Shown piece by piece: positions 46,288-64,000 of a DNA stretch of 64,000 bases. The notes below the pieces were generated by a model. It was not told the DNA's origin. It did not search any database and saw only the letters and a program-made list of their open reading frames with translations. Location: the sequence record PQ330092.1; one strand, 5' to 3'. Positions within the stretch are counted from its first letter, which is position 1; every line of letters begins with the position of its first letter. Made by a program: the position numbers and the translations under genes.

Positions 46288-46295
46288 ATTCCCTC

Positions 46296-48684: not shown

Positions 48685-48755
48685 AATTCCCTCCTTATTC
48701 ATTATACTATATTTAATACAAATAAGAAAGCCAGTATCAAGTACTGGCCTATATT

Positions 48756-49493: not shown

Positions 49494-49565
49494 AATTCCC
49501 TCCTTTATTCATTATACTATATTTAATACAAAAAGAAATGCCAGTATCAAGTACTGGCATTCTTT

Positions 49566-50729: not shown

Positions 50730-50801
50730 ATTTCCCTCCTTTATTCATTATACTATATTTAATACAAAAAGAAAAGCCAGTATTAAGTACTGGCGAAATT
50801 A

Positions 50802-51992
50802 TTACAATTGTCTAGGTGTATCCAGAACATATCTATTTGTACTAGGACCACCATCATCATAAGTTCCGGTTGAATATATATTTTTCATATCCGCAGTTAG
50901 AAAAGTACGATACGAACCGCGATATATTTTTATTTTATCATACATAGAATATGATATTTCTGCTGGCATTGGACATATAGTAAATCTACCAATAGTAACA
51001 TTAGAACCAACACCCAACGAACCAGCATAACTACTCGCATTTAAACCAGTTGCATATACACCTGTACTCGTAACTAGTATACTAGATTGTGCTGGGTATC
51101 CTGTATGAATTGAATACAAAGTTCCAGTTGGTAATGTCGTACTATTGCTCCCTAATACAGCAAGTGCCGAACTGGTTGTGGTATTGTTACCCCATGCACC
51201 ATTACTCGCTAAACCACCAACTAGAAACTGACGTGCACCAGTACTTGGATTCTCAACCAAAGCACTGACTGAACCCATTGAGCATCCAGTGTATTGTAAC
51301 GTTTTTGTGTATGTTGTACTTGGTTTATATAAAGTATATTCATTAAATGGTGTCCATGTGGTACTGGTACTTATACCTGACGTACCACCACCAATATATA
51401 AATTATTTTGTGTATCAAAAAACATTACACAGTTATTTGTTGACAGTATTTGTGCAATATCAACATTAGGCGTGACAGCTTTTACAAATGATCCATCTGT
51501 TATTTGTTGAGTACTACCAGTACCATCAGCGAATTGTCTAGCCCCACTCCAACCAGTACTCCATATTGTATTATTATCCATTAAGAAAGTAAACCACGTA
51601 GTACCTGCATACATCTGTTTAATTGAAGTACTTGAACTTTGTGTGTATAAATTTTCAATATATTGGTTATAACTTAAAAATGATGTAGTACTAGTTGGTA
51701 AACCAATATAATCACCGTATCCACAATAAAAATAATTTAAGTCATTATCTTGTACTAACAAAGTTCCTTGTGACACCCAGAAATCTTTAACATTTTCTCT
51801 AATTAAGGTCCATGACTTTACTGCATTACTATTTCCTCTACCAAACTTCCCAAAACTATTATTTCCACGTGCGTATAGTTGACCATCCGTATAAAGAACG
51901 ACAACATCTAAATCAGTTGGTGTTATTTTCTTAATTTGTAGTGGTACAGGCACAATATTCCCATAATTCATCATTCTTGCAAAAGGTAACAT
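50802..51992 (-). CDS. RCC1-like beta-propeller, MLPF cassette (396 aa)
   Basis: GNNSFGKFG; similar to 49566..50729. Confidence 0.8.
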   Translation of the reverse strand: MLPFARMMNYGNIVPVPLQIKKITPTDLDVVVLYTDGQLYARGNNSFGKFGRGNSNAVKSWTLIRENVKDFWVSQGTLLVQDNDLNYFYCGYGDYIGLPTSTTSFLSYNQYIENLYTQSSSTSIKQMYAGTTWFTFLMDNNTIWSTGWSGARQFADGTGSTQQITDGSFVKAVTPNVDIAQILSTNNCVMFFDTQNNLYIGGGTSGISTSTTWTPFNEYTLYKPSTTYTKTLQYTGCSMGSVSALVENPSTGARQFLVGGLASNGAWGNNTTTSSALAVLGSNSTTLPTGTLYSIHTGYPAQSSILVTSTGVYATGLNASSYAGSLGVGSNVTIGRFTICPMPAEISYSMYDKIKIYRGSYRTFLTADMKNIYSTGTYDDGGPSTNRYVLDTPRQL

Positions 51993-52045
51993 AATTCCCT
52001 CCTTTATTCATTATACTATATTTAATACAAATAAGAATACCAGTA

Positions 52046-53233
52046 TCAAGTACTGGCATTGATTGTTGGAAGTGGGAACTCTTTCATGACAGATGAACTA
52101 CTTGCTGAAATATTATCAGGGGATTTCCCCGCGTAGTATAATTTATTATTAATGTACATATACAACGTTGCATCGTTCCCAGCTACAAGTGATTCACTTT
52201 TCTTAAAATTAACACCATCAGGTAAAATTGCTTCAACAAATGAACCAGAATTAATTGTACTGTTATTTGCCAATTGACCATTGTTATTATAACCAGTACT
52301 ATAAATTTTACCAGAGCTATAATATACCAGGCCACGGGATGAGATGTTTTCAATTCGAATGAATTCACTATCATCTGGAACGGTTTTCGATAACGTTGGC
52401 GTTAATTTATAACCCCCTGCTGTAGTATTATTACCCAACTGACCATCAGCTTGATAGCCCATTGTATACATAGGACATGATTCTGGTGTACCTTTAGTTA
52501 TAATACCAATATAACTCGCACTACAAAAAACGTCTATAGCTTCGGTAACAGGTGTGCCCTTATATTGAACCCAAGGAAATATATATGTGTTTTGAACTCC
52601 ATTTCCCAACGTTCCATGAGATGTTGTCCCAGTACGCCATATTGTATTATCTAGTTTAATAATCCAGTTAGAGGGTGTGATGGATGAACAGAATTTTTTA
52701 ACATTATCGACTAAAAATGTAAATTTATTAAAATATGATGCAGTGTTTAAACCAAACTTTGAATTTTTATTATCACCTAACAAATATAAACTATTATCAG
52801 TACCTAAAATCAAAGCATAATCAAGACCTACATATATCTCTTTGATTTTTGAAATACCAAATTGTGTAAAATAACTCGTACATTCAGTGAATGTTGTTAC
52901 AGTATTTGTTGTATTATTACCTAGCCATTTATCTAAACCACTATAAAAGAATCTATCATCATTTGTTCGTATTAGACAAAACCCATTCCCTGTACTGCAC
53001 CAAAAATCTTTAACATTACTATATATTTTTGTCCATTCAGTAACCTGTGTGGTATTACCTAACCCAAAAATTCCACCATTTTGAAGACCCATAGCCCATA
53101 CTGTTCCATTTACATCAAGTAGCATTGTACATGTAAATGAATAACCAACTGCTGGTGTTACTAATTTAGTAAAATTGGGAACATATGGAATGACTTTATT
53201 CCCGTACTTAACCATTCTTGCAAAAGGTAACAT
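52046..53233 (-). CDS. RCC1-like beta-propeller, MLPF cassette (395 aa)
   Basis: True start 53233; GYNNNGQLA. Confidence 0.82.
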   Translation of the reverse strand: MLPFARMVKYGNKVIPYVPNFTKLVTPAVGYSFTCTMLLDVNGTVWAMGLQNGGIFGLGNTTQVTEWTKIYSNVKDFWCSTGNGFCLIRTNDDRFFYSGLDKWLGNNTTNTVTTFTECTSYFTQFGISKIKEIYVGLDYALILGTDNSLYLLGDNKNSKFGLNTASYFNKFTFLVDNVKKFCSSITPSNWIIKLDNTIWRTGTTSHGTLGNGVQNTYIFPWVQYKGTPVTEAIDVFCSASYIGIITKGTPESCPMYTMGYQADGQLGNNTTAGGYKLTPTLSKTVPDDSEFIRIENISSRGLVYYSSGKIYSTGYNNNGQLANNSTINSGSFVEAILPDGVNFKKSESLVAGNDATLYMYINNKLYYAGKSPDNISASSSSVMKEFPLPTINAST

Positions 53234-53302
53234 AATTCCTCCTTTATTCATTATACTATATTTAGCACAAAAGAAAAGCCAGTATCAAGTACTGGCCTTA
53301 TG

Positions 53303-54412
53303 TTATTTTGGTAAATCAATTTTAGTAAAGACCGCAACATCTTCACTTGCTCCTGGTATGGCGTAATAAGAACCAGTACTATACACATCTCCATTTTTGG
53401 TTAATATCGATGTCAAACCATCACTAAAAAGAACATCCCTAATCTCACTAACTTCAACGGGTAATTGTAAATTGGTAGCACTATATATAGCACCAGTTTG
53501 AGAATTGTTTAATCCCAAACCACGGTTCGCCCCAACACCCTTCTGATATGTACTAGTAATTACCATTTGTGTAGCAGTATTTAAGGCAGGTGAATTCGTC
53601 ATAAACAACGGAGAACTATTAGGCAAAGTACTTACAGGAACTGCACGGAATGTAGTCGTACTTGAACTAAGAAAGTTTGGAGTTTGACCACATACGAAAT
53701 ATGATGTACCATTATAGTAATTTAATGCATTACCACCAATGGCTGCATCGATTACACCAGAACTACGCAATCCCCAAGTGTTAATTTGTGTTTGGTTCCC
53801 CGTACCATGCTGCCCACTACTATTCCATCCAGAACTATATAGCTTATTATCTAATGTAAGATACATACTATCATTCGCATTGGTCATTACTTTACGAACG
53901 TTCGTAGCACATTGAGTTAATGTATAAATTGATGATGAACCAATACCCAAAGAACCACGATATCCATTATCTCCTGCACCATAGAGTACTGAATTAGTGC
54001 TAAGTACAAATATTAAACCATTTGTACATACAATATTAGCAATTTCACTTACTGGTATAGCATTGGTAAACCAATTAGTCCTTTCAACTAATACAGTACT
54101 GTAAGAAGTAGTCGTAGAAGATGAGAACCAGTACGTTTGACCTGATGTCCATATAGTATTATCATTTTTAATAATAACAAGTGTACGATCACCCACGAAA
54201 AAATTAGAAACATCGGCACTTACTAATATCCATGAAGATACCGTGTTGGTATTACCATTTCCAGATTCACCACCTTGATTTCTACCTATGTAATATAAAT
54301 CATGTGAATCAGTCAATAAGAATTGACCTTGTGTAGAAGCACCAACTTTAATTATATTTTTAGGACCAGGTACAATATTTCCGTACTTAACCATTCTTCC
54401 AAAAGGTAACAT
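53303..54412 (-). CDS. RCC1-like beta-propeller, MLPF cassette (369 aa)
   Basis: True start 54412; GWNSSGQHG. Confidence 0.82.
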   Translation of the reverse strand: MLPFGRMVKYGNIVPGPKNIIKVGASTQGQFLLTDSHDLYYIGRNQGGESGNGNTNTVSSWILVSADVSNFFVGDRTLVIIKNDNTIWTSGQTYWFSSSTTTSYSTVLVERTNWFTNAIPVSEIANIVCTNGLIFVLSTNSVLYGAGDNGYRGSLGIGSSSIYTLTQCATNVRKVMTNANDSMYLTLDNKLYSSGWNSSGQHGTGNQTQINTWGLRSSGVIDAAIGGNALNYYNGTSYFVCGQTPNFLSSSTTTFRAVPVSTLPNSSPLFMTNSPALNTATQMVITSTYQKGVGANRGLGLNNSQTGAIYSATNLQLPVEVSEIRDVLFSDGLTSILTKNGDVYSTGSYYAIPGASEDVAVFTKIDLPK

Positions 54413-54485
54413 AAATCCCTCCTTATTCATTATACTATATTTAATACAAATAAGAAAAGCCAGTATCAAGTACTGGCATATCAAA

Positions 54486-55634
54486 TCACTGCAAAAATGA
54501 CATATCGACTTCGGTATAATTAAGAACGTTCTGTCCAGCAATACCTCCCATTACTACAATTGAAGCCCCACAATAATATAACTTCGAAGTATCAGTAAGT
54601 ATAAGTGAACCAGATGGGGTGCGTACCAAATTACACGAAGTATTAAACGAAGTATATGAAGGGGTATAAGAGTACTGATTAATATTATTACCAACACCTA
54701 ATTGACCAGACGAGTTGCTTCCAGATGCATAAAGTACTTCATCACCTTTAACTATATGTGACGCCATGTTACCAACACAAGTATATAAACTATAAACTCC
54801 TGAACTCAATAATGTTGGAGTTTTGTATTGTATATCTGTAGATGAAGAAGTACCACCTGTGCCAAATTCGTTCCCGTATTGTGCACCGAACTGTTTACCA
54901 CATGCGTACAAATTATTATCTGATTTAATAAAAAATGTACTCTGATAACTTACATCAAAATCTATAACATCCGAAGCAATCATCGTCACCCCAGTAATAG
55001 AAGTTTGATTACCTGTACCTAACTGATAGTAATAGTTAAAACCACAACCCCATAAAGTATTATCTTCTTTTAGGTATATGTTACCAACTGCCTTTTTAAC
55101 CGAAGTTATAGTATCTACCCTTTTGAATGTGTTAAAAGAATTAATGTTTGTACCATCACCAAATGATGATAGGTTAGAGTTATTGTTAGCTCCACAACAA
55201 TACAATGTACCATCGTTTGTTATCAAATTTACCTTCATATCATTAAAACTACTCATGTATTTTATATCAGAAACATTAATACCACTGGATGTTATCCACG
55301 TAGTACATTCCGTCCACAAAGTTTTTCTATCAGTTACACCAGTGAATGCCTTCGTGTTACCAGTGATAAAAACTTTTCCAGTACCTTTCTCTTCATACAA
55401 TTGACAATCACTACTGTTATTTTCCAATAGAACTCGTTTAACATTCTCCGCACTAAGAATAAATTTACTCGACGCTACACCAGTTCCAGTACCCCAATTC
55501 GTCGCAGAAGATGCATACAACTTATCAGTATAAGTATCATGAAGATACATGGAATCACTGGAATATATTTTAAAACGTCCATCATCACCAGGGGCAATAT
55601 TCCCGTAATTCATCATTCTAACAAAAGGTAACAT
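54486..55634 (-). CDS. RCC1-like beta-propeller, MLPF cassette (382 aa)
   Basis: True start 55634; GFNYYYQLG, GSNSSGQLG. Confidence 0.82.
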   Translation of the reverse strand: MLPFVRMMNYGNIAPGDDGRFKIYSSDSMYLHDTYTDKLYASSATNWGTGTGVASSKFILSAENVKRVLLENNSSDCQLYEEKGTGKVFITGNTKAFTGVTDRKTLWTECTTWITSSGINVSDIKYMSSFNDMKVNLITNDGTLYCCGANNNSNLSSFGDGTNINSFNTFKRVDTITSVKKAVGNIYLKEDNTLWGCGFNYYYQLGTGNQTSITGVTMIASDVIDFDVSYQSTFFIKSDNNLYACGKQFGAQYGNEFGTGGTSSSTDIQYKTPTLLSSGVYSLYTCVGNMASHIVKGDEVLYASGSNSSGQLGVGNNINQYSYTPSYTSFNTSCNLVRTPSGSLILTDTSKLYYCGASIVVMGGIAGQNVLNYTEVDMSFLQ

Positions 55635-55682
55635 AAATCCCTCCTTATTCATTATATCATATTTACCCCATAAAGAAAACCC

Positions 55683-55711
55683 TTGACATCCTTTCAGTAC
55701 TGGTGTACTAT
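55683..55711 (+). promoter_or_regulatory. sigma70-type promoter for the microprotein array
   Basis: TTGACA-17-TACTAT with CAGTACTG in the spacer. Confidence 0.72.
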
Positions 55712-55736
55712 AGAAGGAATATAAGGAGAACTACAC

Positions 55737-55964
55737 ATGACAAATACTCTTAAGTACTACCTCAATACTCTAAATGAACTAGAGTACGGGGAATTTCTCG
55801 CGGATAGTTCGTGGCTAATTGAGCTAAAAAATTATAATAGTCCAGGATGCACCCTTATGATGAACAATGCAATTGATACCCTCATTGTGAGTATTTTACA
55901 CAGCAACATCTGCGGGGATAGCAATAAACAATTATCAAAAATCTTAGTACTGCTATCTATATGA
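55737..55964 (+). CDS. array microprotein 1 (divergent)
   Basis: AAGGAG SD; YYL..; hydrophobic C-terminus. Confidence 0.65.
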   Translation: MTNTLKYYLNTLNELEYGEFLADSSWLIELKNYNSPGCTLMMNNAIDTLIVSILHSNICGDSNKQLSKILVLLSI

Positions 55965-56164
55965 ATATCGAACAGTACTACATCGATGCACTACCAACAA
56001 AAGGTCTACGTGAAAGCCTACTGCATACACAAACTAATTTCAAACACCTCAAACGTAGCCCTAAACTCCTGAACTCGTACAGGAATAATAACATAAGAAA
56101 TGCTTTACAAGGGGTAGAATGTATGCAATACTATTACATCCTTACCCTATTAATCGAGTACTAA
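55961..56164 (+). CDS. array microprotein 2
   Basis: YY..L..I..A..YYILTLLIEY. Confidence 0.72.
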   Translation: MNIEQYYIDALPTKGLRESLLHTQTNFKHLKRSPKLLNSYRNNNIRNALQGVECMQYYYILTLLIEY

Positions 56165-56165
56165 T

Positions 56166-56375
56166 ATGAATACTGAACATAAAGAATTCTACACCAAATA
56201 CCTTAGCAACGAAGAACAATTGTTTCTAAGGAGTGTATCACCTGTAAGTACCAATACTCAATTCGGTAGAGATTGCTTTAATAATTGTATACGTAGTACT
56301 CTAGAAGCAATCGAATGCAATAACAAAAATATTATGTACTCAGGTTTAATAGGACTAATATATTTCTATGAATAA
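56166..56375 (+). CDS. array microprotein 3
   Basis: HKEFY; near-duplicate of 59747..59956. Confidence 0.78.
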   Translation: MNTEHKEFYTKYLSNEEQLFLRSVSPVSTNTQFGRDCFNNCIRSTLEAIECNNKNIMYSGLIGLIYFYE

Positions 56376-56562
56376 TCATAAAGATTTCTATTGTAGTAAA
56401 CTACCCAAACAAGAACAGCTATCATTCTCTTTAGCACCACCTATGAGAAAGGATAATCTGTATTATAATTACGATTTCAGGATGGTGACACGTTATGCAA
56501 TAGAACATCAGTTCCCTGAAACTAAGTACCGCTCTATCCTGAACCTCATCTTTAAGTTCTAA
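56368..56562 (+). CDS. array microprotein 4
   Basis: HKDFY..YRSILNLIFKF. Confidence 0.75.
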   Translation: MNNHKDFYCSKLPKQEQLSFSLAPPMRKDNLYYNYDFRMVTRYAIEHQFPETKYRSILNLIFKF

Positions 56563-56614
56563 AAGGTACACCAGGGACCGAGTACTTTAATATAGTAAGG
56601 CTAATTACATTATA

Positions 56615-56800
56615 ATGAATCATATAAGCTACTACTACCAACAACTATCCGACAGAGACAAGTACAGTCACAACTCCCATGTGTGGTACTACAAACGCGG
56701 CAGTATAAGAGACAAACAACATTACTTCTGTATTTCTATTAAAGAAGCACTGACAACTAAGTACACGTACCGAGCAGTACTTAAACTTATTGAAATGTAA
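56615..56800 (+). CDS. array microprotein 5
   Basis: KYTYRAVLKLIEM. Confidence 0.72.
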   Translation: MNHISYYYQQLSDRDKYSHNSHVWYYKRGSIRDKQHYFCISIKEALTTKYTYRAVLKLIEM

Positions 56801-56810
56801 AGAGAATACT

Positions 56811-56993
56811 ATGAACATTGAATTGTACTTAAGTAAATTACAGCCTGGCGATAGATTCATCTACAATAAGTTCGAATTCAACTACAAGAACGGGAGCAAC
56901 AAATATCGTCGAGGATACCTATATACAAGCACAAGAGATGCACAAAACGAAAAGTACACATACAGAGAAGTACTTAAACTAATCTCTATTTGA
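56811..56993 (+). CDS. array microprotein 6
   Basis: ATG 56811; AQNEKYTYREVLKLISI. Confidence 0.75.
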   Translation: MNIELYLSKLQPGDRFIYNKFEFNYKNGSNKYRRGYLYTSTRDAQNEKYTYREVLKLISI

Positions 56994-57001
56994 GGTAATA
57001 T

Positions 57002-57187
57002 ATGAATACATTTGAGTACTATACCAATAAACTATCTATGCCTGAAAGATCTCATCTCTATGTGTGGAGAAATGCGTATAAAAGCGGCAATAAACTTATA
57101 CAAAGAAATTCCCTTACAGTGTGTACAAATTTAATTAAAGCAGAGTACCGCACATATATTGAAGTACTCAAACTGATAGCAATATAA
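57002..57187 (+). CDS. array microprotein 7
   Basis: MNTFEYY..YIEVLKLIAI. Confidence 0.75.
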   Translation: MNTFEYYTNKLSMPERSHLYVWRNAYKSGNKLIQRNSLTVCTNLIKAEYRTYIEVLKLIAI

Positions 57188-57195
57188 GGTACTCT

Positions 57196-57375
57196 ATGCA
57201 AGAATTCTATATCTATAACCTCCAGCACAAAGATAGATACAACTATAATAAATTCCAAAGGTACTACACAGTCGGGAACAAAAGAGATAAAAAACGTTAT
57301 CTACTCTCGTGTACAGTAGAAGCACAAAACGAAAAGTACACGTACAGAGAAGTACTTAAACTAATCTCAATCTAA
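57196..57375 (+). CDS. array microprotein 8 (59 aa, below track threshold)
   Basis: MQEFY..AQNEKYTYREVLKLISI. Confidence 0.75.
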   Translation: MQEFYIYNLQHKDRYNYNKFQRYYTVGNKRDKKRYLLSCTVEAQNEKYTYREVLKLISI

Positions 57376-57382
57376 GGTAGAC

Positions 57383-57571
57383 ATGAACACTTTTGAGTAC
57401 TACTTCAATAAACTAAACCACATAGAACAAAGTATGCACCACACATTTATTCAGAACCATCAATCATCTTCACCTCTAATTAAAAACATATCGATTGAGA
57501 TTATCACTACCCGTGTACAGTCATCTGAACGTTATATGTATATTGATGTACTGAAACTCATCTCTATGTAA
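57383..57571 (+). CDS. array microprotein 9
   Basis: MNTFEYY..YIDVLKLISM. Confidence 0.75.
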   Translation: MNTFEYYFNKLNHIEQSMHHTFIQNHQSSSPLIKNISIEIITTRVQSSERYMYIDVLKLISM

Positions 57572-57579
57572 GGAATACT

Positions 57580-57759
57580 ATGCAACAATTCTATAGAGAA
57601 CACATAAGCATTAAAGACCGTTTCATGTACGACACCTTCGTGAAGTACTACAAACTAGGAACAAAAAGTACTAAAAATATTAATCTCAATAGCTGCATTT
57701 ATGCTGTACTAACACAAGATAATCCCTACAGGGAAATCATTGCCCTGGCATCTATATAA
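57580..57759 (+). CDS. array microprotein 10 (59 aa, below track threshold)
   Basis: MQQFY..PYREIIALASI. Confidence 0.72.
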   Translation: MQQFYREHISIKDRFMYDTFVKYYKLGTKSTKNINLNSCIYAVLTQDNPYREIIALASI

Positions 57760-57769
57760 AGGAAACCAA

Positions 57770-58429
57770 ATGAAACTTAATCCACACAGCAAACAATACC
57801 TTAAGCACTTTAAATACCTCAACAGTATTCAAGCAGAATCTTTTACACCAGCATATACGTATCACCCAAATGTACTAAAGAAACGAAATAAAAAGAAAAA
57901 ATCCAGAAATGTTCTCGTATCTAAGAACCTCAAATCGTACTTGAAGAAAAATAATATAGCTCTTGCTTTTATTAATATCTATAATACTGATTTAAAAGTA
58001 TTGAGTACTAATACCAGCACAAAAGCACTAAAGAATGCATCTATCTATATACACATGGATAATATCCCGTGCACTATAATTCTATCTTTCGGGAATGTAT
58101 ACTTCTTCGGGAATTGTAATAGCACCCATGATATCAGTACTGCACAATTCCAAATCGGCGATATGTACTGCATGGGTTCAGAAAAAATACACGATAACAT
58201 GCACTTCTTCCAAAAGCAACGTACTAACGAAACTGATACAGTACTGCAATTCCTAAAAGAACTACAAAACAAAGAATTAACACCAGAAGAAGAATTCATG
58301 TACAGTACTGTAATCGATAATCCAGAACTCTATAAAAACGCGTACAATCTAACAAAACATGTACAGGAACTTATCAGTACTGATAAGAAATTTCATCACC
58401 TCATTACGTATATTTCAAACTATGTATAA
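57770..58429 (+). CDS. basic hypothetical protein interrupting the array, EExxF family
   Basis: AAGGA SD before ATG 57770; PEEEFMYSTVID. Confidence 0.75.
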   Translation: MKLNPHSKQYLKHFKYLNSIQAESFTPAYTYHPNVLKKRNKKKKSRNVLVSKNLKSYLKKNNIALAFINIYNTDLKVLSTNTSTKALKNASIYIHMDNIPCTIILSFGNVYFFGNCNSTHDISTAQFQIGDMYCMGSEKIHDNMHFFQKQRTNETDTVLQFLKELQNKELTPEEEFMYSTVIDNPELYKNAYNLTKHVQELISTDKKFHHLITYISNYV

Positions 58430-58604
58430 AGAATACTACAAAGATAAAATCCCAATGCATCTACAACACCATATACCAAACGTTGCATTGGGTATCAAAG
58501 ATCACGCAAAGATAATGTTCCAACAATGTACTAAGTACACGCTCATATACGATGATAATCCATATATGCTGTACTACGTAGTAATGCTAACATTCAGGTA
58601 CTAA
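58422..58604 (+). CDS. array microprotein 11
   Basis: ATG 58422; MYKEYY..LTFRY. Confidence 0.75.
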   Translation: MYKEYYKDKIPMHLQHHIPNVALGIKDHAKIMFQQCTKYTLIYDDNPYMLYYVVMLTFRY

Positions 58605-58605
58605 T

Positions 58606-58785
58606 ATGAATACTTATAAAGAATTCTACCTCTCGTACCTTAATTCCGATATAGTAACATCCAATACATTCAGTACTAAAATTATCTATAATGAATTAAT
58701 GAAAGAATGTATTAAAGGTGCTATTAACCCTAAAGATACGTATGACTTGTACTATGCAGTACTAACCCTTGTTTTCACGAAATAA
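58606..58785 (+). CDS. array microprotein 12 (59 aa, below track threshold)
   Basis: YKEFY..ECI..LYYAVLTLVFTK. Confidence 0.72.
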   Translation: MNTYKEFYLSYLNSDIVTSNTFSTKIIYNELMKECIKGAINPKDTYDLYYAVLTLVFTK

Positions 58786-58793
58786 CACATAAT

Positions 58794-58985
58794 ATGAATA
58801 ACCACAAAGAATACTACATAGAGAAACTCCCAATGTATCTCCAACACCTTGTACCAACAGTACCATTGGGTATAGAAAAAAACTACGAAAAAGACTACTT
58901 CATTCAGTGCACTAAATCCTCGATATATATTGAAGACTATAATCGAGTACTGTATCACATCCTTTTACTAATATATAGGTACTAA
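58794..58985 (+). CDS. array microprotein 13
   Basis: HKEYY..LLLIYRY; close to no. 11. Confidence 0.78.
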   Translation: MNNHKEYYIEKLPMYLQHLVPTVPLGIEKNYEKDYFIQCTKSSIYIEDYNRVLYHILLLIYRY

Positions 58986-58986
58986 T

Positions 58987-59169
58987 ATGCACAAAGAATA
59001 CTACACACAATTTCTCCCCAGCATTTTTGAACACTACGCCAGATACAAAGTCCCTATGGATAACGATTTGGCAGTACTGGGATTCAATAACTGCATAGAA
59101 CGAAGTATAGAAAATAGTAGTAGTTATGACCAGCTATATAACACTATCCTACTTATATTCAGGTACTAA
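58987..59169 (+). CDS. array microprotein 14
   Basis: MHKEYY..ILLIFRY. Confidence 0.78.
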   Translation: MHKEYYTQFLPSIFEHYARYKVPMDNDLAVLGFNNCIERSIENSSSYDQLYNTILLIFRY

Positions 59170-59170
59170 T

Positions 59171-59359
59171 ATGCATAAAGAATACTACACAAAATATTTC
59201 CCAATGTACCTCAGTACTAATCTATTAGATAAACCTCGCGGTATCAATGCACAAAACGATAAAGTGTACTTTACTATGTGCACTAAAGCATGTATACTAG
59301 ATCATGACAGCTACCATCGAGTACTGTATCATACCCTGTACCTAGCTTTCGTATTCTAA
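59171..59359 (+). CDS. array microprotein 15
   Basis: ATG 59171; MHKEYY. Confidence 0.78.
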   Translation: MHKEYYTKYFPMYLSTNLLDKPRGINAQNDKVYFTMCTKACILDHDSYHRVLYHTLYLAFVF

Positions 59360-59368
59360 GAGAACAAT

Positions 59369-59554
59369 ATGCATAAAGAATTCTACTTAAGCCATCTCGA
59401 TCTAAACTCCCAAATGCTTATACCACTAATCCCAATAGATATCAAGGATAAGAAAAATACCGAACAATTCATTTACCATACACAGTGTGCGATCACCCCA
59501 AATTACATTCCATATGAATTGTACTACATTATCGCCCTAATATATAGGTACTAA
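59369..59554 (+). CDS. array microprotein 16
   Basis: MHKEFY..ALIYRY. Confidence 0.78.
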   Translation: MHKEFYLSHLDLNSQMLIPLIPIDIKDKKNTEQFIYHTQCAITPNYIPYELYYIIALIYRY

Positions 59555-59555
59555 T

Positions 59556-59741
59556 ATGCATAGAGAATACTACACACAATTTGTTAAAGGGAACTACAAA
59601 TGTGCCGTACCCAGAACCCCTTTAAATTCTCATGACCCAAGTACTATATTCTTGTTTAATGACGCAATACGTACAGTACTCAATACTAAAGATGAAGATG
59701 TGCAGTACGTATTCTTACTATTACTTATATACAGACACTAA
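59556..59741 (+). CDS. array microprotein 17
   Basis: MHREYY..LLIYRH. Confidence 0.78.
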   Translation: MHREYYTQFVKGNYKCAVPRTPLNSHDPSTIFLFNDAIRTVLNTKDEDVQYVFLLLLIYRH

Positions 59742-59746
59742 CTAAT

Positions 59747-59956
59747 ATGAATAAAGAACATAAAGAATTCTACTCCAAATACATAAGCCCCTCAGAACAA
59801 ATGTTTCTAAGGACTACTCCACCTTTAAGTACTAATACATTTTTCGGCAGAGTATGCTACAATAATTGTATTCAAATGACTTTAAACGCAAATGAAGATG
59901 GTAACAGTACTAACCTGTACTCAGGTATCATAGGTATACTATTCCTGTATGAATAA
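59747..59956 (+). CDS. array microprotein 18
   Basis: Near-duplicate of 56166..56375. Confidence 0.78.
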   Translation: MNKEHKEFYSKYISPSEQMFLRTTPPLSTNTFFGRVCYNNCIQMTLNANEDGNSTNLYSGIIGILFLYE

Positions 59957-60137
59957 TTACAAAGACTTCTATTTGAATACACTACCTACTGTACTTTCTC
60001 TAAGTGCTCAATGTAAAATCCCGCTGGATAATGCTTACGCCAGATATAGCTATTCCATAACTGTTAATCGATGTATAGAGAATCATTGCAGTACTAACCA
60101 GTACTATAACATAATCCTACTTATATTCAGGTACTAA
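59949..60137 (+). CDS. array microprotein 19
   Basis: YKDFY..ILLIFRY. Confidence 0.78.
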   Translation: MNNYKDFYLNTLPTVLSLSAQCKIPLDNAYARYSYSITVNRCIENHCSTNQYYNIILLIFRY

Positions 60138-60138
60138 T

Positions 60139-60321
60139 ATGAATACTGAACATAAAGAATTCTATATACGAAAACTAACATTCGTCCCCGTAAGAATATA
60201 TAAAGAATGCGACCCAAGATTATACCTATGGCACTTCAATGAGTGCATAAAAGATTCTATATACCATAAGAACTATAAAGAACAATTGTGCTCAGTACTA
60301 ACACTAGTACTATCATATTAA
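60139..60321 (+). CDS. array microprotein 20
   Basis: HKEFY..FNECI. Confidence 0.75.
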   Translation: MNTEHKEFYIRKLTFVPVRIYKECDPRLYLWHFNECIKDSIYHKNYKEQLCSVLTLVLSY

Positions 60322-60336
60322 TTAATAGAGAATACT

Positions 60337-60528
60337 ATGTATAAAAACTTCTATATAAGTAAACTAAAAGAAAATGAACAAGTATGGATTAGATCTATAA
60401 TTCCACTGGCATTTAATAGATATGCATTTAACAGATGTACCGAGATTGCTATAGACCCTTATAATATCAAAGAGAATGTACAGTATAATCAGTACTACTA
60501 TATCTTAATGCTTATATATAGGAAGTAA
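60337..60528 (+). CDS. array microprotein 21
   Basis: YKNFY..FNRC..LMLIYRK. Confidence 0.75.
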   Translation: MYKNFYISKLKENEQVWIRSIIPLAFNRYAFNRCTEIAIDPYNIKENVQYNQYYYILMLIYRK

Positions 60529-60545
60529 TTAAACACAAGTAGACA

Positions 60546-60630
60546 GGGGAAGCTCCTAGTGAACAACCTTTATGTACAGGCGAATTGTTAAAATTCAGCC
60601 TGGACAAATGCGATCACTAGGATTCTCCCC
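60546..60630 (+). ncRNA. candidate structured RNA / long hairpin
   Basis: GGGGA..TCCTAGTGA / TCACTAGGA..TCCCC with inner CAGGCGAATT / AATTCAGCCTG. Confidence 0.4.
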
Positions 60631-61156
60631 AGGCTAAACCCAGTAATCATAGGTAGTCATAAGTAATCATATATAAACATTTATATGAGCACCGTAGAAT
60701 CACAGAATGATTATATATGATTCAGTACTGATTAGTATAGACAAGAATGCTCAAGAATGCACGGGAAGGATTCAGTACTGATATGCCACTAAGTAGGCAG
60801 AGGAAGTCTGCCGTACTTTGTAGTTTCCAAGCTCCTTTTCCATTTTGCAAATTACATCAAATGTAATCAAAAGTAATCACGCAATGATTAGTACTGAATT
60901 ATTACTTTCACCTTAATTACAATTACCCTTTTACCCTTCGGGGTAAAATTCAATTACCCCTTGAGGCTCCAGCAAAAAGTTGGTTAGTACTCCATCCTAA
61001 ATCTCGATCCTAAAAATTTTGGAGTACCTATGAAATAAAAGTTGGATCTTCGAAAGTTGAAATTTACGTTGGGACGTTTATGATTTGTGGGATATAATGA
61101 TGTTTGTAGACGGGTAGTTCTCAAGAATATCAGTACTGAATGGTGAAAGAAAGTTA

Positions 61157-61290
61157 TTGACATTATGATTCAGTACTGTATAATGTTCTACATAGAGAGA
61201 TGAGTTGCTGCGAACAATTCATTTACTCTACCTCCTGTCGTGAGACAGTACAGAAAAGATAGTTCCTCCTGTGGTGGTACATCTTTTTGA
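61157..61290 (+). ncRNA. promoter-driven candidate sRNA
   Basis: TTGACA-16-TATAAT; three hairpins incl. GTGA tetraloop; two CCTCCTGT; no ORF. Confidence 0.5.
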
Positions 61291-61574
61291 ACCTCATATG
61301 AAAATTGTAATAACAGTACTGATATTAACAGAATGGTGTCAGTACTGATTTTAATCTAAAGCATTATGCCACCAGCACAAGCTGGTGGATTCCCTCTAAC
61401 AGTATTCAGTACTACATGATAGTCTTCATCCTCCTAGGGTAACATAGTGAGGGCTATGATGGCAGTACTGAATACTCCCTTTCAAAAGATAGATCTATGG
61501 TATAGTACTGACGGATTTTGGGTGTAGTTACCCTGGATGGATTTTGGACGTAGATATGTCTAGCCCTCCAGAAG

Positions 61575-61700
61575 TCTGGAAGTAAAGATGGCTATCCATC
61601 TAGACGGCTAAACGGCTAGATTTCTGGATGGCTGGATGGCTAGACGTTTGGACGGCTAAACGGCTAGATGGTTACACGTCTGGAAGTATAGACGGCTAAA
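61575..61700. repeat. iteron-like short repeats
   Basis: GACGGCTAAACGGCTAGA at 61603 and 61651; eight (C/T)GGCT units. Confidence 0.75.
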
Positions 61701-62315
61701 TCAAAATTTTATTTTGTTTTTCCAATAGTTCCCCTACCGCGTGGGGATAGTTTCCCCGCAGTATCTGTAGTTAGATTTTTCTGAATCTGGAATCATTATC
61801 TTATAAACTGGGGGCAATGTCAACGACCTGGCCGGATATTTTTAAAAATTTTTTCAGTACTGAATTTTGGGCGTAACTATGCACCCGGTGGGCTTGAGTC
61901 TTTCTCGACTTGATGGAACTATTATACAGTACTGGAAAAATAAAGCAATACCCTGGATGAAAAAAGTTTTAATTAATTTGCTTGCCATCCTGGGCCGGAC
62001 TATGGTACTATATTTCAGTACTGAGAAAGTGCGTTTACCTGCTAGGGTGCGGGAGTGTATCCTTTTTTTATATCTTGAATTTTGGGCGTAATTCCGCACC
62101 CTCTGGGGTTTCCGCTTTCTCGCGTCTATGTAGTAATTATACGCTTTTTCAGGATCAAGTCAATACCTAAAAACAAAATAATTGAAAATAATTTAACGCG
62201 TTTAAACGGCCTGTAAAGCCCTGGAATGATTGGAATGGTGCAAATGTATAGCTTATGTGTATTAATGCGTTAGAATGCGTCTGAGGCCGTTTTATGGGGT
62301 GTAGTAGTGATTTGG

Positions 62316-62408
62316 TTGATTCAGTACTGAATAATAGTACTCCTATATAGAAAGATAGTTCCCCTGGATTGATTCAGTACTGAATAATAGTACTCCTATA
62401 TAGAAAGA
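62316..62408. repeat. perfect 40-bp direct repeat (two copies)
   Basis: TTGATTCAGTACTGAATAATAGTACTCCTATATAGAAAGA at 62316 and 62369. Confidence 0.9.
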
Positions 62409-62432
62409 AAACTATTTTAAAAGTATTTGTAG

Positions 62433-62498
62433 AAAGTACTTGCACCGTACTGATAAAAGCGTATAATGTTTTACATCGAGAGCGGGAACACTTCCCGC
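62433..62498 (+). promoter_or_regulatory. early promoter-leader cassette, copy 1
   Basis: AAAGTACTTGCA..GCGTATAATGTTTTACATC + GCGGGAA-cac-TTCCCGC. Confidence 0.8.
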
Positions 62499-62522
62499 TA
62501 CACATTAAGAGAGATTAAAACG

Positions 62523-62885
62523 ATGGCGACTCAAATCAATAAAATCATGCTTAACCTGGTAAACTTCCGCGAAGAGATGAAAGGTCTTCCGGCTGAAACT
62601 GTAAAAATTCACATTGCAGCTTATCGGGAACTTATTGCAATGTTGCCGCTTAAGCGTGAACAATACGCCGCTACTTTGATGCTTGATTCAATGATCCATA
62701 TAATGATCTCAAATGATTTAACGATGGTTTATCAGTACATGGGCGAAAATTTCGCGGTGTGTAGTAAGCCAGTACCAGGGATGGCAACTACTGAGGAATT
62801 GCACGGTTTAAATTTAAAGCAAGATGCATGGGATAATATGCCTCGTTTCCTGGTATGGGCTGACAGTGGCAAAATTTACAAATAA
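62523..62885 (+). CDS. early hypothetical protein
   Basis: ATG 62523 after GAGAG; MATQINK. Confidence 0.78.
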   Translation: MATQINKIMLNLVNFREEMKGLPAETVKIHIAAYRELIAMLPLKREQYAATLMLDSMIHIMISNDLTMVYQYMGENFAVCSKPVPGMATTEELHGLNLKQDAWDNMPRFLVWADSGKIYK

Positions 62886-62892
62886 GTTTAAT

Positions 62893-62958
62893 AAAGTACT
62901 TGCAAACTAAGTTTAAAAGCGTATAATGTTTTACATCAGGTGGGGAATAGTTCCCCAC
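62893..62958 (+). promoter_or_regulatory. early promoter-leader cassette, copy 2
   Basis: TTGCAA-16-TATAAT, GTTTTACATC, GTGGGGAA-tag-TTCCCCAC. Confidence 0.8.
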
Positions 62959-62977
62959 TATATAAGAGGATTAAAAA

Positions 62978-63217
62978 ATGGCTAAATCAAAAATGTTCTT
63001 AGGTCACAAAAACAAAACTCATTGGAATGTAAGCCTTTGGATTAATAACGATGAATCATTATACCGGTTGGCCCAGGACTTTATTAACGATAGCACTAAT
63101 CGCAATGATGCGGCCCGTCATATGATGTTATTTTTAGAACAGACTGGACAAGATAAAACACCGGACGGATTCAAATATAGCACTACTGCGATCCGTGCGG
63201 CGATGGTTGGAATGTAA
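62978..63217 (+). CDS. early hypothetical protein
   Basis: GAGGA SD; WNVSLWINND..TPDG motif resembles small phage early proteins (from memory). Confidence 0.8.
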   Translation: MAKSKMFLGHKNKTHWNVSLWINNDESLYRLAQDFINDSTNRNDAARHMMLFLEQTGQDKTPDGFKYSTTAIRAAMVGM

Positions 63218-63305
63218 TAGAATAGAATTTATTTAAAGTACTATTGCACGCTGATAGTACTTTATAATAGTGTTTTATTCATACACCAACGATAAGGGCA
63301 ACAGC

Positions 63306-63572
63306 ATGAATATTAAGTATTTTGCGACGCGTGAACAAGCTCGGATCGCCGCACGCCAGGACGGGGCAACGTTTAAAGATATGGGCGTACAATCGGAACG
63401 TGGTAAACGTTGGGCCATTGTAAAGCGTAGTACCGCCAGATCATTACAGTACTGGTTAGCGGCCTTAAAAAGTCCCGATAGTGTATCGCGTCGAGTGGTA
63501 GAAATAAAGCTCGACCGAAAGGGCAACCGCGTGACCGTGTACCGTACTAAAAAGATTGCAGTACTTGAATAA
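63306..63572 (+). CDS. early hypothetical basic protein
   Basis: ATG 63306 after AAGGG; MNIKYFATRE. Confidence 0.75.
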   Translation: MNIKYFATREQARIAARQDGATFKDMGVQSERGKRWAIVKRSTARSLQYWLAALKSPDSVSRRVVEIKLDRKGNRVTVYRTKKIAVLE

Positions 63573-63638
63573 AAAGTACTTGCAAACTATGTTTAAAGGC
63601 GTATAATGTTTTACATCGAGAGCGGGAACTCTTCCCGC
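63573..63638 (+). promoter_or_regulatory. early promoter-leader cassette, copy 3
   Basis: TTGCAA-16-TATAAT, GTTTTACATC, GCGGGAA-ctc-TTCCCGC. Confidence 0.8.
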
Positions 63639-63659
63639 CTATAACCTGGAGTAATAAAA

Positions 63660-63890
63660 ATGACTAATATGTATATGACTGAAGTTAAAACCGTAAAAGA
63701 TACTACCACGAATAAAACTACTTACTTACAGCGGATCTGTGGTGTATGGCAACGTATCAGCAAATCAAAGTACTTTAAATTAACATCATATGCCAATCGT
63801 TCGGATTCATTCAGTACTGAAATAAAAGGTAATAAAGTACACCAATACGGCACTTATTATTATTATAGCCTGGACGCGATTGTAGTATAA
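63660..63890 (+). CDS. early hypothetical protein (76 aa)
   Basis: GGAG SD. Confidence 0.78.
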   Translation: MTNMYMTEVKTVKDTTTNKTTYLQRICGVWQRISKSKYFKLTSYANRSDSFSTEIKGNKVHQYGTYYYYSLDAIVV

Positions 63891-63920
63891 GTAGTTTACA
63901 AATCTTTACAATTGCCAGTA

Positions 63921-63949
63921 TTGACTTATTTTGTCAGTACTGGCATAAT
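63921..63949 (+). promoter_or_regulatory. sigma70-type promoter
   Basis: TTGACT-17-CATAAT with CAGTACTG in the spacer. Confidence 0.7.
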
Positions 63950-64000
63950 GTATTCATTGGCAGATAAGCCGTAGCCCATAGGGTGCGGAAGTGTATCTAT

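What the first reader, a model, noticed from the sequence alone, without database searches (positions are those of the whole stretch)
55737..60528. Tandem array of 21 paralogous ~60-aa microproteins whose last codons double as the next RBS
Seen: 21 ORFs of 59-75 aa (three below the track threshold: 57196, 57580, 58606) share (H/Y)KE(F/Y)Y..L..(F)xxC(I/T)..Y..(I/V)L.LI(F/Y)RY. Several junctions are AGG TAC TAA T ATG (near 58597, 58978, 59161, 59547, 60129), so the conserved Arg-Tyr-stop also forms the AGGT SD and couples translation. Sub-blocks are recent duplicates (56166 vs 59747; 56811 vs 57196). One TTGACA/TACTAT promoter (55683) heads the array. Inference: a diversifying battery of small host- or defence-interacting proteins, for example anti-defence or decoy proteins.
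Basis: partly seen in the sequence, partly recalled or inferred. Interest (0 to 1): 0.7.

Follow-up and report, generated by a model that had tools for sequence, protein, structure and literature searches.

The report
Tandem microprotein gene array, jumbo coliphage
A giant E. coli phage carries a tightly packed operon of about twenty related genes for 60-residue helical proteins of unknown function; relatives gain and lose copies by recombination between the copies' similar starts, a typical though unusually tidy case of accessory-gene expansion in a large phage.

Summary
The array is real and protein-coding. The window comes from an Asteriusvirus-type jumbo coliphage (99.8% identical to phage JP4). 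Nineteen small genes are demonstrable paralogues in two subfamilies (13 'A', 6 'B'), linked by profile comparison (88% probability). One more (g02) is a possible member; g01 is not shown to be one. Both subfamilies give confident four-helix models (pLDDT about 91) with no relatives in PDB, Pfam or NCBIfam. A profile search of 1.84 billion proteins finds only 28 clusters; the three divergent ones traced map to Asteriusvirus. A sigma-70-type promoter and strong ribosome-binding site head the array and are conserved in nine phages. Orthologues show purifying selection (dN/dS 0.35-0.59). Cassette content differs between relatives, and two differences are crossovers inside the shared gene-start block. 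The 'recent duplicates' are old (dS 0.6-0.76). The array ends 264 bp before the direct terminal repeat. Function is unknown. Early-expressed, host-directed binding proteins remain the best guess, but this is untested. Side finding: AGTACT is about ten-fold over-represented, with synonymous codon choice favouring the site.

The parts
55683..55711 (+). Sigma-70-type promoter (TTGACA, 17-nt spacer, TACTAT) heading the array. The spacer holds one copy of the TCAGTACTG palindrome.
   Evidence: (10 of 12 matches). The -35 element is identical and the -10 is TACTAT or TACAAT in nine Asteriusvirus phages.
55723..55728 (+). Shine-Dalgarno AAGGAG, 8 nt upstream of the g01 start codon.
   Evidence: Conserved as AAGGAG or TAGGAG in nine phages.
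55737..55964 (+). g01, 75 aa, acidic (pI 4.7). First gene of the operon. Family membership not shown.
   Evidence: hhalign against A and B gives 2.8% and 0.7% probability. An orthologue is present in all 7 closely related phages compared.
55961..56164 (+). g02, 67 aa. Overlaps the g01 stop (ATGA). Possible divergent family member.
   Evidence: hhalign against A gives 37% probability, P 3.6e-4, over the C-terminal 25 columns.
56166..56375 (+). g03, 69 aa, subfamily A. Forms a two-gene unit with g04, paralogous to g19/g20.
   Evidence: PHROG 11711 at E 1.7e-12. BLASTP against g19 at 1e-30, 59% aa identity.
56368..56562 (+). g04, 64 aa, subfamily A. Its start overlaps the g03 stop by 8 nt (ATGAATAA).
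   Evidence: A profile, 83 bits.
56563..56614 (+). 52-nt spacer that aligns with the 3' tail of an extra cassette present in slurp01, BF17 and WPEC5.
56615..56800 (+). g05, 61 aa, subfamily B, basic (pI 9.4).
   Evidence: (B profile, 103 bits).
56811..56993 (+). g06, 60 aa, subfamily B. Paralogue of g08 (56% aa identity).
57002..57187 (+). g07, 61 aa, subfamily B. Paralogue of g09 (41% aa identity).
57196..57375 (+). g08, 59 aa, subfamily B. This is the member modelled by AlphaFold2.
   Evidence: Model pLDDT 90.5, pTM 0.72, four helices.
57383..57571 (+). g09, 62 aa, subfamily B. The only member with omega above 1 in orthologue comparisons, but on few substitutions.
57580..57759 (+). g10, 59 aa, subfamily B.
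57770..58429 (+). g11, 219 aa, basic (pI 9.3) with a lysine-rich stretch. A single-copy gene found in the middle of the array in every relative. Not a family member.
   Evidence: PHROG 29152 at E 3e-113, function unknown. hhalign against A and B gives 0.7% and 1.4% probability. Homologues occur only on contigs of this phage type.
58422..58604 (+). g12, 60 aa, subfamily A. Its start overlaps the g11 stop by 8 nt. It ends AGG TAC TAA.
58606..58785 (+). g13, 59 aa, subfamily A.
58794..58985 (+). g14, 63 aa, subfamily A. This is the member modelled by AlphaFold2. It ends AGG TAC TAA.
   Evidence: PHROG 11711 at E 1.2e-27. Model pLDDT 91.2, pTM 0.75. Junction.
58987..59169 (+). g15, 60 aa, subfamily A. 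It ends AGG TAC TAA.
59171..59359 (+). g16, 62 aa, subfamily A.
59369..59554 (+). g17, 61 aa, subfamily A. It ends AGG TAC TAA.
59556..59741 (+). g18, 61 aa, subfamily A.
59747..59956 (+). g19, 69 aa, subfamily A. Paralogue of g03. Absent, together with g20, from 121Q and UE-S1.
59949..60137 (+). g20, 62 aa, subfamily A. Its start overlaps the g19 stop by 8 nt. It ends AGG TAC TAA.
60139..60321 (+). g21, 60 aa, subfamily A.
60337..60528 (+). g22, 63 aa, subfamily A. Last gene of the array, 264 nt before the terminal-repeat boundary at 60792.
   Evidence: PHROG 11711 at E 7e-24. Boundary mapped.

Best explanation
This is one polycistronic operon of a genus-restricted family of ~60-residue, four-helix cytoplasmic proteins. 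It sits at the right end of the unique region of an Asteriusvirus jumbo coliphage, immediately before the direct terminal repeat.

Shown:
- 19 genes belong to one superfamily with two subfamilies.
- They are packed stop-to-start, with overlaps or gaps of at most 15 nt at 20 of 21 junctions.
- A ribosome-binding site is embedded in or next to the upstream stop codon, an arrangement suited to coupled translation.
- A single conserved sigma-70-type promoter lies upstream.
- Each cassette is held by purifying selection.
- Cassette number and order change between close relatives through unequal homologous recombination. Two of the three differences examined are crossovers inside the block shared by gene starts (the junction plus the codons of the conserved N-terminal Lys-Glu-aromatic-Tyr motif).

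Inferred:
- The host RNA polymerase reads the promoter, so the array is expressed early.
- The proteins are non-virion, soluble binding modules on a constant helical scaffold.
- Each cassette keeps its own specificity for a host target (takeover or counter-defence) or a phage target.
- The array works as an 'accordion' whose content is reshuffled between lineages.

The molecular targets are unknown.
For: - Identity of the phage.
- Paralogy: BLASTP matrix; PHROG 11711; A-B hhalign 88% probability, E 3e-6.
- Real proteins: AlphaFold2 pLDDT 91.2 and 90.5, pTM 0.75 and 0.72, with the same four-helix order in both. Pooled orthologue dN/dS is 0.35-0.59 in five phage comparisons; the neighbouring RCC1-like gene gives 0.23.
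- Operon and coupling: junction table; the 13-mer junction occurs 5 times against 0.21 expected; the promoter and SD are conserved in nine phages; promoter- and terminator-like site counts over 55000-63000 are at chance level, and no internal site scores above the head promoter.
- Accordion: cassette maps differ among 8 phages; chimeric junctions are seen in 121Q and WPEC5; a cassette remnant remains in the window.
- Restricted range: 28 clusters among 1.84 billion representatives; about 36 Escherichia/Salmonella phage records; the three divergent clusters traced (P0084, P0090, P0091) map to the Asteriusvirus phages JNE01 and Turkey5.
- Not in virions: absent from the JP4 list of 49 proteins and from the phAPEC6 list of 62, both of which contain RCC1-like neighbours.
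- Position next to the terminal repeat.
- Analogy for early expression: in the related phage CBB, RpoD-like promoters cluster in a region of short hypothetical ORFs that the authors regard as the early host-takeover region (PMC5259590).
Against: - There are no expression data for any Asteriusvirus, so early timing rests only on a promoter-like sequence. In this AT-rich DNA, promoter-like sites occur at chance frequency overall (35 found, 38.7 expected).
- No member resembles any known anti-defence, host-takeover or other characterised protein.
- Orthologues show no positive selection on the columns that vary among paralogues (omega 0.45 against 0.36). This fits an active arms race poorly.
- A four-base AGGT is a weak Shine-Dalgarno, and several members have no recognisable SD.
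- Small proteins are easily missed by virion mass spectrometry.
- Omega of 0.35-0.59 indicates rather relaxed constraint.
Confidence: 0.55

Rival explanations
1. The proteins are small nucleic-acid-binding factors that serve the phage's own programme, for example transcription timing or DNA organisation, rather than acting on host proteins. They might bind the abundant AGTACT palindromes.
For: - Five of six subfamily B members, g11 and several A members are basic (pI 8.5-9.6).
- The genome is saturated with AGTACT, under DNA-level selection.
- The array has the highest coding-region density of the site (7.1 per kb against 2.5-2.9 per kb).
- The array promoter and other strong promoter-like sites carry the extended palindrome.
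Against: - Foldseek finds no helix-turn-helix or other DNA-binding fold, although such folds are very abundant in the PDB.
- About half of the A members are acidic or neutral.
- AGTACT enrichment extends to phage CBB. No family relative was detected outside Asteriusvirus in the searches run, so the motif does not depend on this family.
Confidence: 0.15
2. The proteins are partners (assembly factors, chaperones or adaptors) of the adjacent, divergently oriented array of about 12 RCC1-like paralogues, and the two arrays expanded together.
For: - The two arrays share one intergenic region in every relative examined.
- Both are tandem expansions specific to this genus. phAPEC6 has eleven RCC1-like genes while GAP32 has one (PMC7247149).
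- RCC1-like proteins are virion-associated.
Against: - The promoter is of the host sigma-70 type, whereas virion proteins are expected late. This timing argument is an inference.
- The microproteins were not detected in virions.
- Copy numbers do not match (19-21 against about 12).
- No co-variation between the two arrays was tested.
Confidence: 0.1
3. The array is largely dispensable duplicated material: real ORFs under weak constraint, kept by recombination and genome-size slack in a jumbo phage, with no distinct function for each copy.
For: - Omega of 0.35-0.59 is high for functional proteins.
- Whole cassettes are missing from viable relatives. 121Q has 16 small genes against 22 here.
- The function is unknown.
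Against: - Omega is clearly below 1: 205 synonymous differences on 2072 sites against 372 non-synonymous on 8650 sites.
- The ten cassettes present in all seven close relatives are found as uninterrupted ORFs in each of them.
- Paralogues with saturated dS still keep a confident common fold.
- The promoter and SD are strictly conserved.
Confidence: 0.12
4. The region is not protein-coding: it is a DNA-level repeat array, for example of AGTACT-bearing binding sites, whose ORFs are incidental.
For: AGTACT density is highest here among coding regions, and the conserved protein motifs (Glu/Gln-Tyr-Tyr, Val-Leu) coincide with possible AGTACT sites.
Against: - dN/dS is below 1.
- Every unit has an ATG, and all junctions but one leave at most 15 nt between genes.
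- Confident, alignment-supported folds are obtained.
- Tandem Repeats Finder sees no DNA-level periodicity.
- Paralogues are recognisable as proteins (E down to 1e-30) while their synonymous sites are saturated.
Confidence: 0.03

Closest known systems
PHROG 11711, i.e. the 'hypothetical proteins' 121Q gp251-265 and phAPEC6 gp542c
   Same: Subfamily A members match this phage orthologous group at E 1e-12 to 1e-27 over their full length. The same genes have been annotated in GenBank since the 121Q record.
   Different: The group has no function, structure or description. Subfamily B, g01 and g02 have no PHROG match at E 0.01. I found no paper that describes the two-subfamily structure, the coupling junctions or the cassette turnover.
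Lineage-specific tandem expansions in jumbo phages, such as the ~35-copy zinc-ribbon family of Bacillus phage G and the RCC1-like array of this same phage genus
   Same: These are many tandem paralogues of a small domain confined to one phage lineage. They are taken as evidence that jumbo genomes grow by tandem duplication (PMC7824862; PMC7247149).
   Different: This is a different fold with no detectable relatives. The units are far smaller (about 60 aa, whole proteins). Here the recombination junctions that change copy number can be read directly.
Early host-takeover regions of short ORFs behind host-type promoters: the CBB_390-546 region (PMC5259590), and T4 early and T5 pre-early genes (my own knowledge)
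   Same: Both are runs of short genes of unknown function behind RpoD-like promoters, near or in the terminal repeat.
   Different: Those regions are mixtures of unrelated small genes. Here nearly all genes are paralogues of one family, and early timing has not been measured.
Terminal multigene families and 'genomic accordions' of large eukaryotic DNA viruses such as poxviruses and African swine fever virus (my own knowledge, used as an analogy only)
   Same: Both are tandem paralogous accessory genes next to the genome's terminal repeats, whose copy number changes by unequal recombination between lineages.
   Different: There is no homology. The host-interaction role is established there and unknown here. 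No recent amplification is seen here: the closest paralogues have dS of at least 0.6.
Anti-defence gene clusters of phages, such as anti-CRISPR and anti-restriction loci (my own knowledge)
   Same: Both encode small, fast-turning-over, lineage-restricted proteins expressed from early promoters.
   Different: Such loci usually hold unrelated genes and often a helix-turn-helix regulator. No similarity to any characterised protein was found, and no anti-defence profile library was available to test.

Membership tests
PHROG 11711 (phage orthologous group, unknown function) | Full-length match to the group's profile | tested here: met
   g03, g14, g15 and g22 match at E 1.7e-12, 1.2e-27, 2e-24 and 7e-24, covering the whole 62-position profile. 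The other nine A members are linked to these by BLASTP and the A profile.
PHROG 11711 (phage orthologous group, unknown function) | Subfamily B, g01 and g02 also match the profile | tested here: not met
   g01, g02, g05, g07 and g08 have no PHROG hit at E 0.01. B is joined to A only by profile-profile comparison (88% probability).
Tandem multigene family evolving by unequal recombination ('accordion') | Head-to-tail paralogues on one strand | tested here: met
   19 paralogues in 4.8 kb, all on the + strand.
Tandem multigene family evolving by unequal recombination ('accordion') | Copy number and content differ between close relatives | tested here: met
   The array holds 15-23 genes (counting the 219-aa g11), with different cassette orders, in 8 phages.
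Tandem multigene family evolving by unequal recombination ('accordion') | Breakpoints lie in sequence shared by the paralogues | tested here: met
   The chimeric junctions in 121Q and WPEC5 have their crossover inside the shared start block. A third indel leaves a cassette tail.
Tandem multigene family evolving by unequal recombination ('accordion') | Copy-number change is adaptive | not testable with these tools
   This needs phenotype or population data.
Translationally coupled operon | Stop and start codons overlap or lie within a few nucleotides | tested here: met
   4 overlaps, 6 junctions with a 1-nt gap, 10 with 5-15 nt and 1 with 52 nt.
Translationally coupled operon | Ribosome-binding site lies within or abutting the upstream coding sequence | tested here: inconclusive
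   AGGT, AGGA, GAGG or GAGA lies 4-6 nt before the ATG at 12 of 21 internal junctions. None is recognisable at the other 9.
Translationally coupled operon | Downstream translation depends on upstream translation | not testable with these tools
   This needs expression data.
Known anti-defence or host-takeover proteins | Sequence or fold similarity to a characterised member | tested here: not met
   No hit in Pfam, NCBIfam, PDB sequences or PDB folds. In BFVD only the family's own members match. PADLOC, which covers defence rather than anti-defence, also gave nothing. No dedicated anti-defence library was on hand.
Known anti-defence or host-takeover proteins | Demonstrated inhibition of a host system | not testable with these tools
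   No experimental data exist for this family.
Helix-turn-helix / Cro-like small DNA-binding proteins | HTH fold | tested here: not met
   Foldseek of both models against 350,542 PDB chains gave a best E of 3.3 and 6.3, with no HTH protein among the hits.
Virion (structural or packaged) proteins | Detected in purified particles | tested here: not met
   None of the family motifs occurs in the JP4 virion LC-MS/MS table of 49 proteins. No array gene is in the phAPEC6 list of 62. Caveat: 7-kDa proteins are easily missed.

The most novel reading that the evidence does not exclude
The array is a phage counterpart of the terminal multigene families of large eukaryotic DNA viruses. It would be a terminal-repeat-proximal accordion of a previously unseen four-helix scaffold, in which each cassette neutralises a different host immunity or takeover target. 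Cassette content, reshuffled by recombination at the shared gene-start block, would then help set which E. coli and Salmonella strains each Asteriusvirus can exploit.
Probability: 0.25. Interest if true: 0.7.

Novelty: new member of a known kind. Interest (0 to 1): 0.45.

Why it matters
Jumbo phages are being characterised as therapy candidates, yet most of their genes have no known function. This array makes up about 3% of the genes of an Asteriusvirus. It is among the parts of the genome that differ most between otherwise near-identical isolates, so it is a plausible contributor to differences in how they perform on different strains.

It is also a clean natural example of how a tandem family of whole microproteins is kept, expressed and reshuffled. 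The crossover points are legible in the sequence, and the same short block serves as stop codon, ribosome-binding site, start codon and recombination homology.

If the proteins prove to be host-directed inhibitors, they would add about twenty small binders on a new, confidently modelled scaffold. If not, the finding remains a well-documented but ordinary lineage-specific expansion.

Tried and rejected
- Pfam, NCBIfam, PADLOC, PDB-sequence and Foldseek (PDB, BFVD) searches with single members, with profiles and with both models gave nothing beyond the family itself.
- I tested whether the C-terminal third of the central 219-aa gene (g11) is a fused family domain, as it looks by eye. hhalign rejects this at 0.7% and 1.4% probability.
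- g01 as a family member is not supported.
- The search for relatives in IMG/VR failed.
- A split of dN/dS into the columns that are conserved and those that vary among paralogues was meant to reveal a diversifying surface. The difference is small (0.36 against 0.45).
- My first ortholog-finder reported 'counterpart frame differs' for several genes. That comes from extrapolating the start through indels and is not evidence of broken genes. The ORF-based map finds uninterrupted counterparts wherever one is listed.
- One dN/dS script timed out, and one script failed on file names.
- A literature search for expression data on this genus found none. One of those searches was badly framed and wasted.
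- Rfam and Tandem Repeats Finder found no RNA family and no DNA-level periodicity in the array.
- A transmembrane tail was considered for the hydrophobic C-terminal helix and rejected. The stretch is only 10-14 residues, and in both models it packs as the last helix of the bundle.

Full report
**What the window is.**
The 5-kb region is 99.8% identical to Escherichia phage JP4, 99.4% to vB_EcoM_E9.1 and about 93-94% to phage 121Q. All 34 matching GenBank phage records are Escherichia or Salmonella jumbo phages of 310-386 kb. The taxonomy given for 121Q, BF17, slurp01, JNE01 and UE-S1 is genus Asteriusvirus. In those records the region is annotated as a run of 'hypothetical protein' genes next to 'regulator of chromosome condensation' (RCC1-like) genes.

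**The observation.**
- ORF listing and the E9.1 annotation agree on 22 small genes of 59-75 aa between 55737 and 60528, here called g01-g22. All are on the + strand. One 219-aa gene, g11 (57770-58429), lies in the middle.
- All-vs-all BLASTP splits the small genes into two subfamilies. Subfamily A is g03, g04 and g12-g22 (13 genes). Subfamily B is g05-g10 (6 genes). E-values within a subfamily reach 1e-30 and 1e-19.
- A matches PHROG 11711, a group of unknown function, at up to 1e-27. B has no PHROG match.
- With alignments enriched by database homologues (72 A and 33 B sequences), hhalign links A and B end to end: 54 columns, 88% probability, E 3e-6. I therefore treat them as one superfamily.
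- g02 is a weak candidate (37% probability, P 3.6e-4, C-terminal helix only). g01 and g11 are not related by this test.
- In the 72-sequence A alignment one tyrosine (g14 residue 8) is invariant. Lys5 is the commonest residue in 90% of sequences. The commonest residue reaches 75-88% at positions 6, 12, 25, 53, 59 and 60. The stretch 18-35 mostly stays below 45%.

**Junctions and promoter.**
- The 13-mer AGGTACTAATATG occurs exactly five times in the 64 kb, against 0.21 expected. The sites are the g12/g13, g14/g15, g15/g16, g17/g18 and g20/g21 junctions. There Arg-Tyr-stop, a four-base AGGT 6 nt upstream of the ATG, and the next start are one block.
- Of the 21 junctions, four are overlaps (ATGA or ATGNNTAA), six leave 1 nt, ten leave 5-15 nt and one leaves 52 nt.
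- In subfamily B the purine-rich motif sits on or just after the stop codon (TAAGGT, TGAGGT, TAAGGA).
- This is the anatomy of translational coupling, although 9 of the 21 internal junctions have no recognisable SD.
- The 84-nt gap upstream of g01 holds TTGACA-17-TACTAT and AAGGAG. Both are conserved in nine phages. They include JNE01, whose cassettes are all below 75% identical to the window's.
- Promoter-like sites in general are no more frequent here than in shuffled sequence (35 against 38.7). It is the conservation, not the match, that carries weight.

**Are they real proteins?**
- AlphaFold2 on the A alignment (g14) gives mean pLDDT 91.2 and pTM 0.75, with helices at 4-9, 14-17, 30-45 and 49-62.
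- On the B alignment (g08) it gives pLDDT 90.5 and pTM 0.72, with helices at 2-7, 11-26, 29-43 and 46-58.
- Nei-Gojobori dN/dS, pooled over the small genes, is 0.49, 0.38, 0.59, 0.35 and 0.35 against 121Q, BF17, slurp01, WPEC5 and UE-S1. The neighbouring RCC1-like gene gives 0.23, and g11 gives 0.34-0.66.
- Pooled counts are 205 synonymous differences on 2072 sites against 372 non-synonymous on 8650 sites.
- Tandem Repeats Finder sees no DNA periodicity, and Rfam finds nothing.
- The region is therefore protein-coding under moderate purifying selection. The refutation condition named in the finding (neutral evolution) is not met.
- Columns that vary among paralogues are hardly less constrained in orthologues (omega 0.45 against 0.36). 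Each cassette looks like a settled gene rather than a target of ongoing diversification.

**Age and turnover.**
- The closest paralogue pairs are 73% (g03/g19) and 69% (g06/g08) identical in DNA, with dS 0.60 and 0.76. Their right-hand neighbours (g04/g20, g07/g09) are paralogous too, so two-gene units were duplicated.
- These duplications are older than the splits among the sampled species (pooled dS 0.06-0.19). 'Recent' is therefore wrong.
- Turnover is nevertheless visible. I labelled cassettes by 75% identity. The window and E9.1 then read A-V. 121Q lacks F-I, M, S and T. BF17 and WPEC5 replace C and D with two others and carry extra cassettes. slurp01 has an extra one. UE-S1 has 15. JNE01 shares no label.
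- Identity per gene between the same two phages ranges from 72% to 100%, which is a mosaic pattern.
- Three differences were read at the base level:
  1. The 121Q junction where the window has g19 and g20 is a chimera. Its left part equals the window's g18/g19 junction and its right part equals g21. The switch lies inside the roughly 30 nt that g19 and g21 share at their starts.
  2. WPEC5 has one gene where the window has g12 and g13. Its first bases equal g12 and the rest equals g13. The switch lies inside the shared Tyr-Lys-Glu-x-Tyr codons.
  3. The window's only long spacer (56563-56614) aligns with the tail of a cassette present in slurp01.
- Unequal homologous recombination at the conserved start block is thus shown to be how the array changes.

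**Range.**
- A word-indexed search of 5.8 billion proteins found 73 A clusters and 32 B clusters. Every hit that carries a source name is from an Escherichia or Salmonella phage or from E. coli, and the long contigs are about 310-384 kb.
- An exhaustive profile search of 1.84 billion representatives found 28 clusters, all 59-69 aa.
- Three of the divergent clusters (P0084, P0090, P0091) map to JNE01 and Turkey5.
- tblastn against 50,697 phage records finds about 36 records, all Escherichia or Salmonella phages.
- The family looks confined to this genus-level lineage.

**Function.**
- Nothing known resembles these proteins. There are no Pfam, NCBIfam or PADLOC hits. No PDB sequence hit falls below E 0.3. 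No Foldseek PDB hit falls below E 3. In BFVD only members of the same family match.
- They are tyrosine-rich (4-10 Tyr each). Five of the six B members are basic, while A ranges from pI 5.3 to 9.4.
- None is in the virion proteomes of JP4 (49 proteins) or phAPEC6 (62 proteins), although RCC1-like neighbours are.
- The physical left end of fEgEco12 was determined by PhageTerm and restriction digests, with a 20,993-bp direct terminal repeat (PMC13070987). It maps to window base 60792 at 96.9% identity over 3.2 kb. The array is therefore the last gene block of the unique region, 264 bp from the repeat.
- In the related phage CBB, RpoD-like promoters cluster in a region of short hypothetical ORFs next to the terminal repeat, which the authors regard as the early host-takeover region (PMC5259590).
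- From these facts I infer, but have not shown, early expression by host RNA polymerase and a role as small cytoplasmic binding proteins, most likely directed at host functions.
- The rivals cannot be excluded: DNA-binding factors, partners of the RCC1-like array, or largely dispensable duplicates. They are scored in the report sections.

**Comparison and novelty.**
- The genes are already in GenBank and PHROGs as hypothetical proteins. [quoted passage not shown]
- I found no paper that describes this family, its two subfamilies, its junctions or its turnover.
- Tandem lineage-specific expansions are a known feature of jumbo phages.
- I therefore file this as a new member of a known kind. It is well documented and mechanistically legible at the DNA level, but its function is unknown.

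**Side finding.**
- AGTACT occurs 225 times in the window, against about 22 expected from base composition. It is the top 6-mer even against a maximal-order Markov model.
- Codon choice shows that the DNA itself favours the site. Tyr is TAC in 85-100% of AG_T contexts but in 27-30% elsewhere outside the array (59% inside it). Ser-Thr is written AGTACT in 38-75% of cases, where 4% is expected if codons were used equally.
- The excess is also present in JNE01 (88 against 4) and in Pectobacterium phage CBB of another genus (48 against 7). Other AT-rich palindromes are at expectation, and GGTACC and CGTACG are depleted.
- The extended palindrome TCAGTACTGA clusters in the gene-poor start of the terminal repeat. 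It also sits in the spacers of the array promoter and of several perfect TTGACA promoters.
- No paper in the library pairs 'AGTACT' with jumbo phages.
- This may deserve a finding of its own.

My scripts built profiles (hmmbuild) only for searching.

Noticed in passing
whole window; densest at 55737-64000: The 6-bp palindrome AGTACT is about 10-fold over-represented (225 sites against about 22). Synonymous codon choice favours it in all three reading phases. The excess is shared with JNE01 and with Pectobacterium phage CBB of a different genus. GGTACC and CGTACG are depleted. No paper in the library pairs the motif with jumbo phages.
   Followed up: partly
window 60722-62383; also 1114-1244, 3259-3303, 63811-63942: The extended palindrome TCAGTACTG(A) gives 48 strand-matches against 0.65 expected, clustered in gene-poor DNA. 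It lies in the -35/-10 spacer of the array promoter (55694) and directly before the -10 of perfect TTGACA promoters at 16612 and 61157. It is a candidate operator or early-promoter element.
   Followed up: partly
window 60792-64000: Window base 60792 corresponds to the experimentally determined left end of phage fEgEco12, so the rest of the window lies in the roughly 21-kb direct terminal repeat. A hairpin (60793-60812) sits exactly at the boundary. The JP4 paper instead reports cos ends from PhageTerm, which conflicts with the fEgEco12 result.
   Followed up: partly
window 40887-55652, minus strand: A second tandem array of about 12 RCC1-like beta-propeller paralogues (about 390 aa each) is oriented divergently from the microprotein array. 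Two such proteins are virion-associated in both JP4 and phAPEC6.
   Followed up: partly
window 57770-58429: A conserved single-copy 219-aa basic gene with a lysine-rich stretch (PHROG 29152, unknown function) sits in the middle of the array in every relative examined, between an upstream block that holds all the B cassettes and a downstream block of A cassettes only. It is unrelated to the family.
   Followed up: partly
window 61599-61698: A degenerate short tandem repeat (periods of 16, 24, 32 and 48 nt, 66-78% matches) lies inside the terminal repeat.
   Followed up: no
window 60529-62465: About 1.9 kb with no + strand ORF of 60 aa or more, spanning the unique/repeat boundary. The same stretch is unannotated in 121Q. 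No Rfam family matches.
   Followed up: partly
window 1776-2779, 29598-30287, 37421-38100: Three further adjacent paralogue pairs of about 112-141 aa, showing that tandem duplication is common in this genome.
   Followed up: no
window 94-168 and 1686-1759: tRNA-Asn (GTT) and tRNA-Thr (TGT) genes lie at the start of the window.
   Followed up: no
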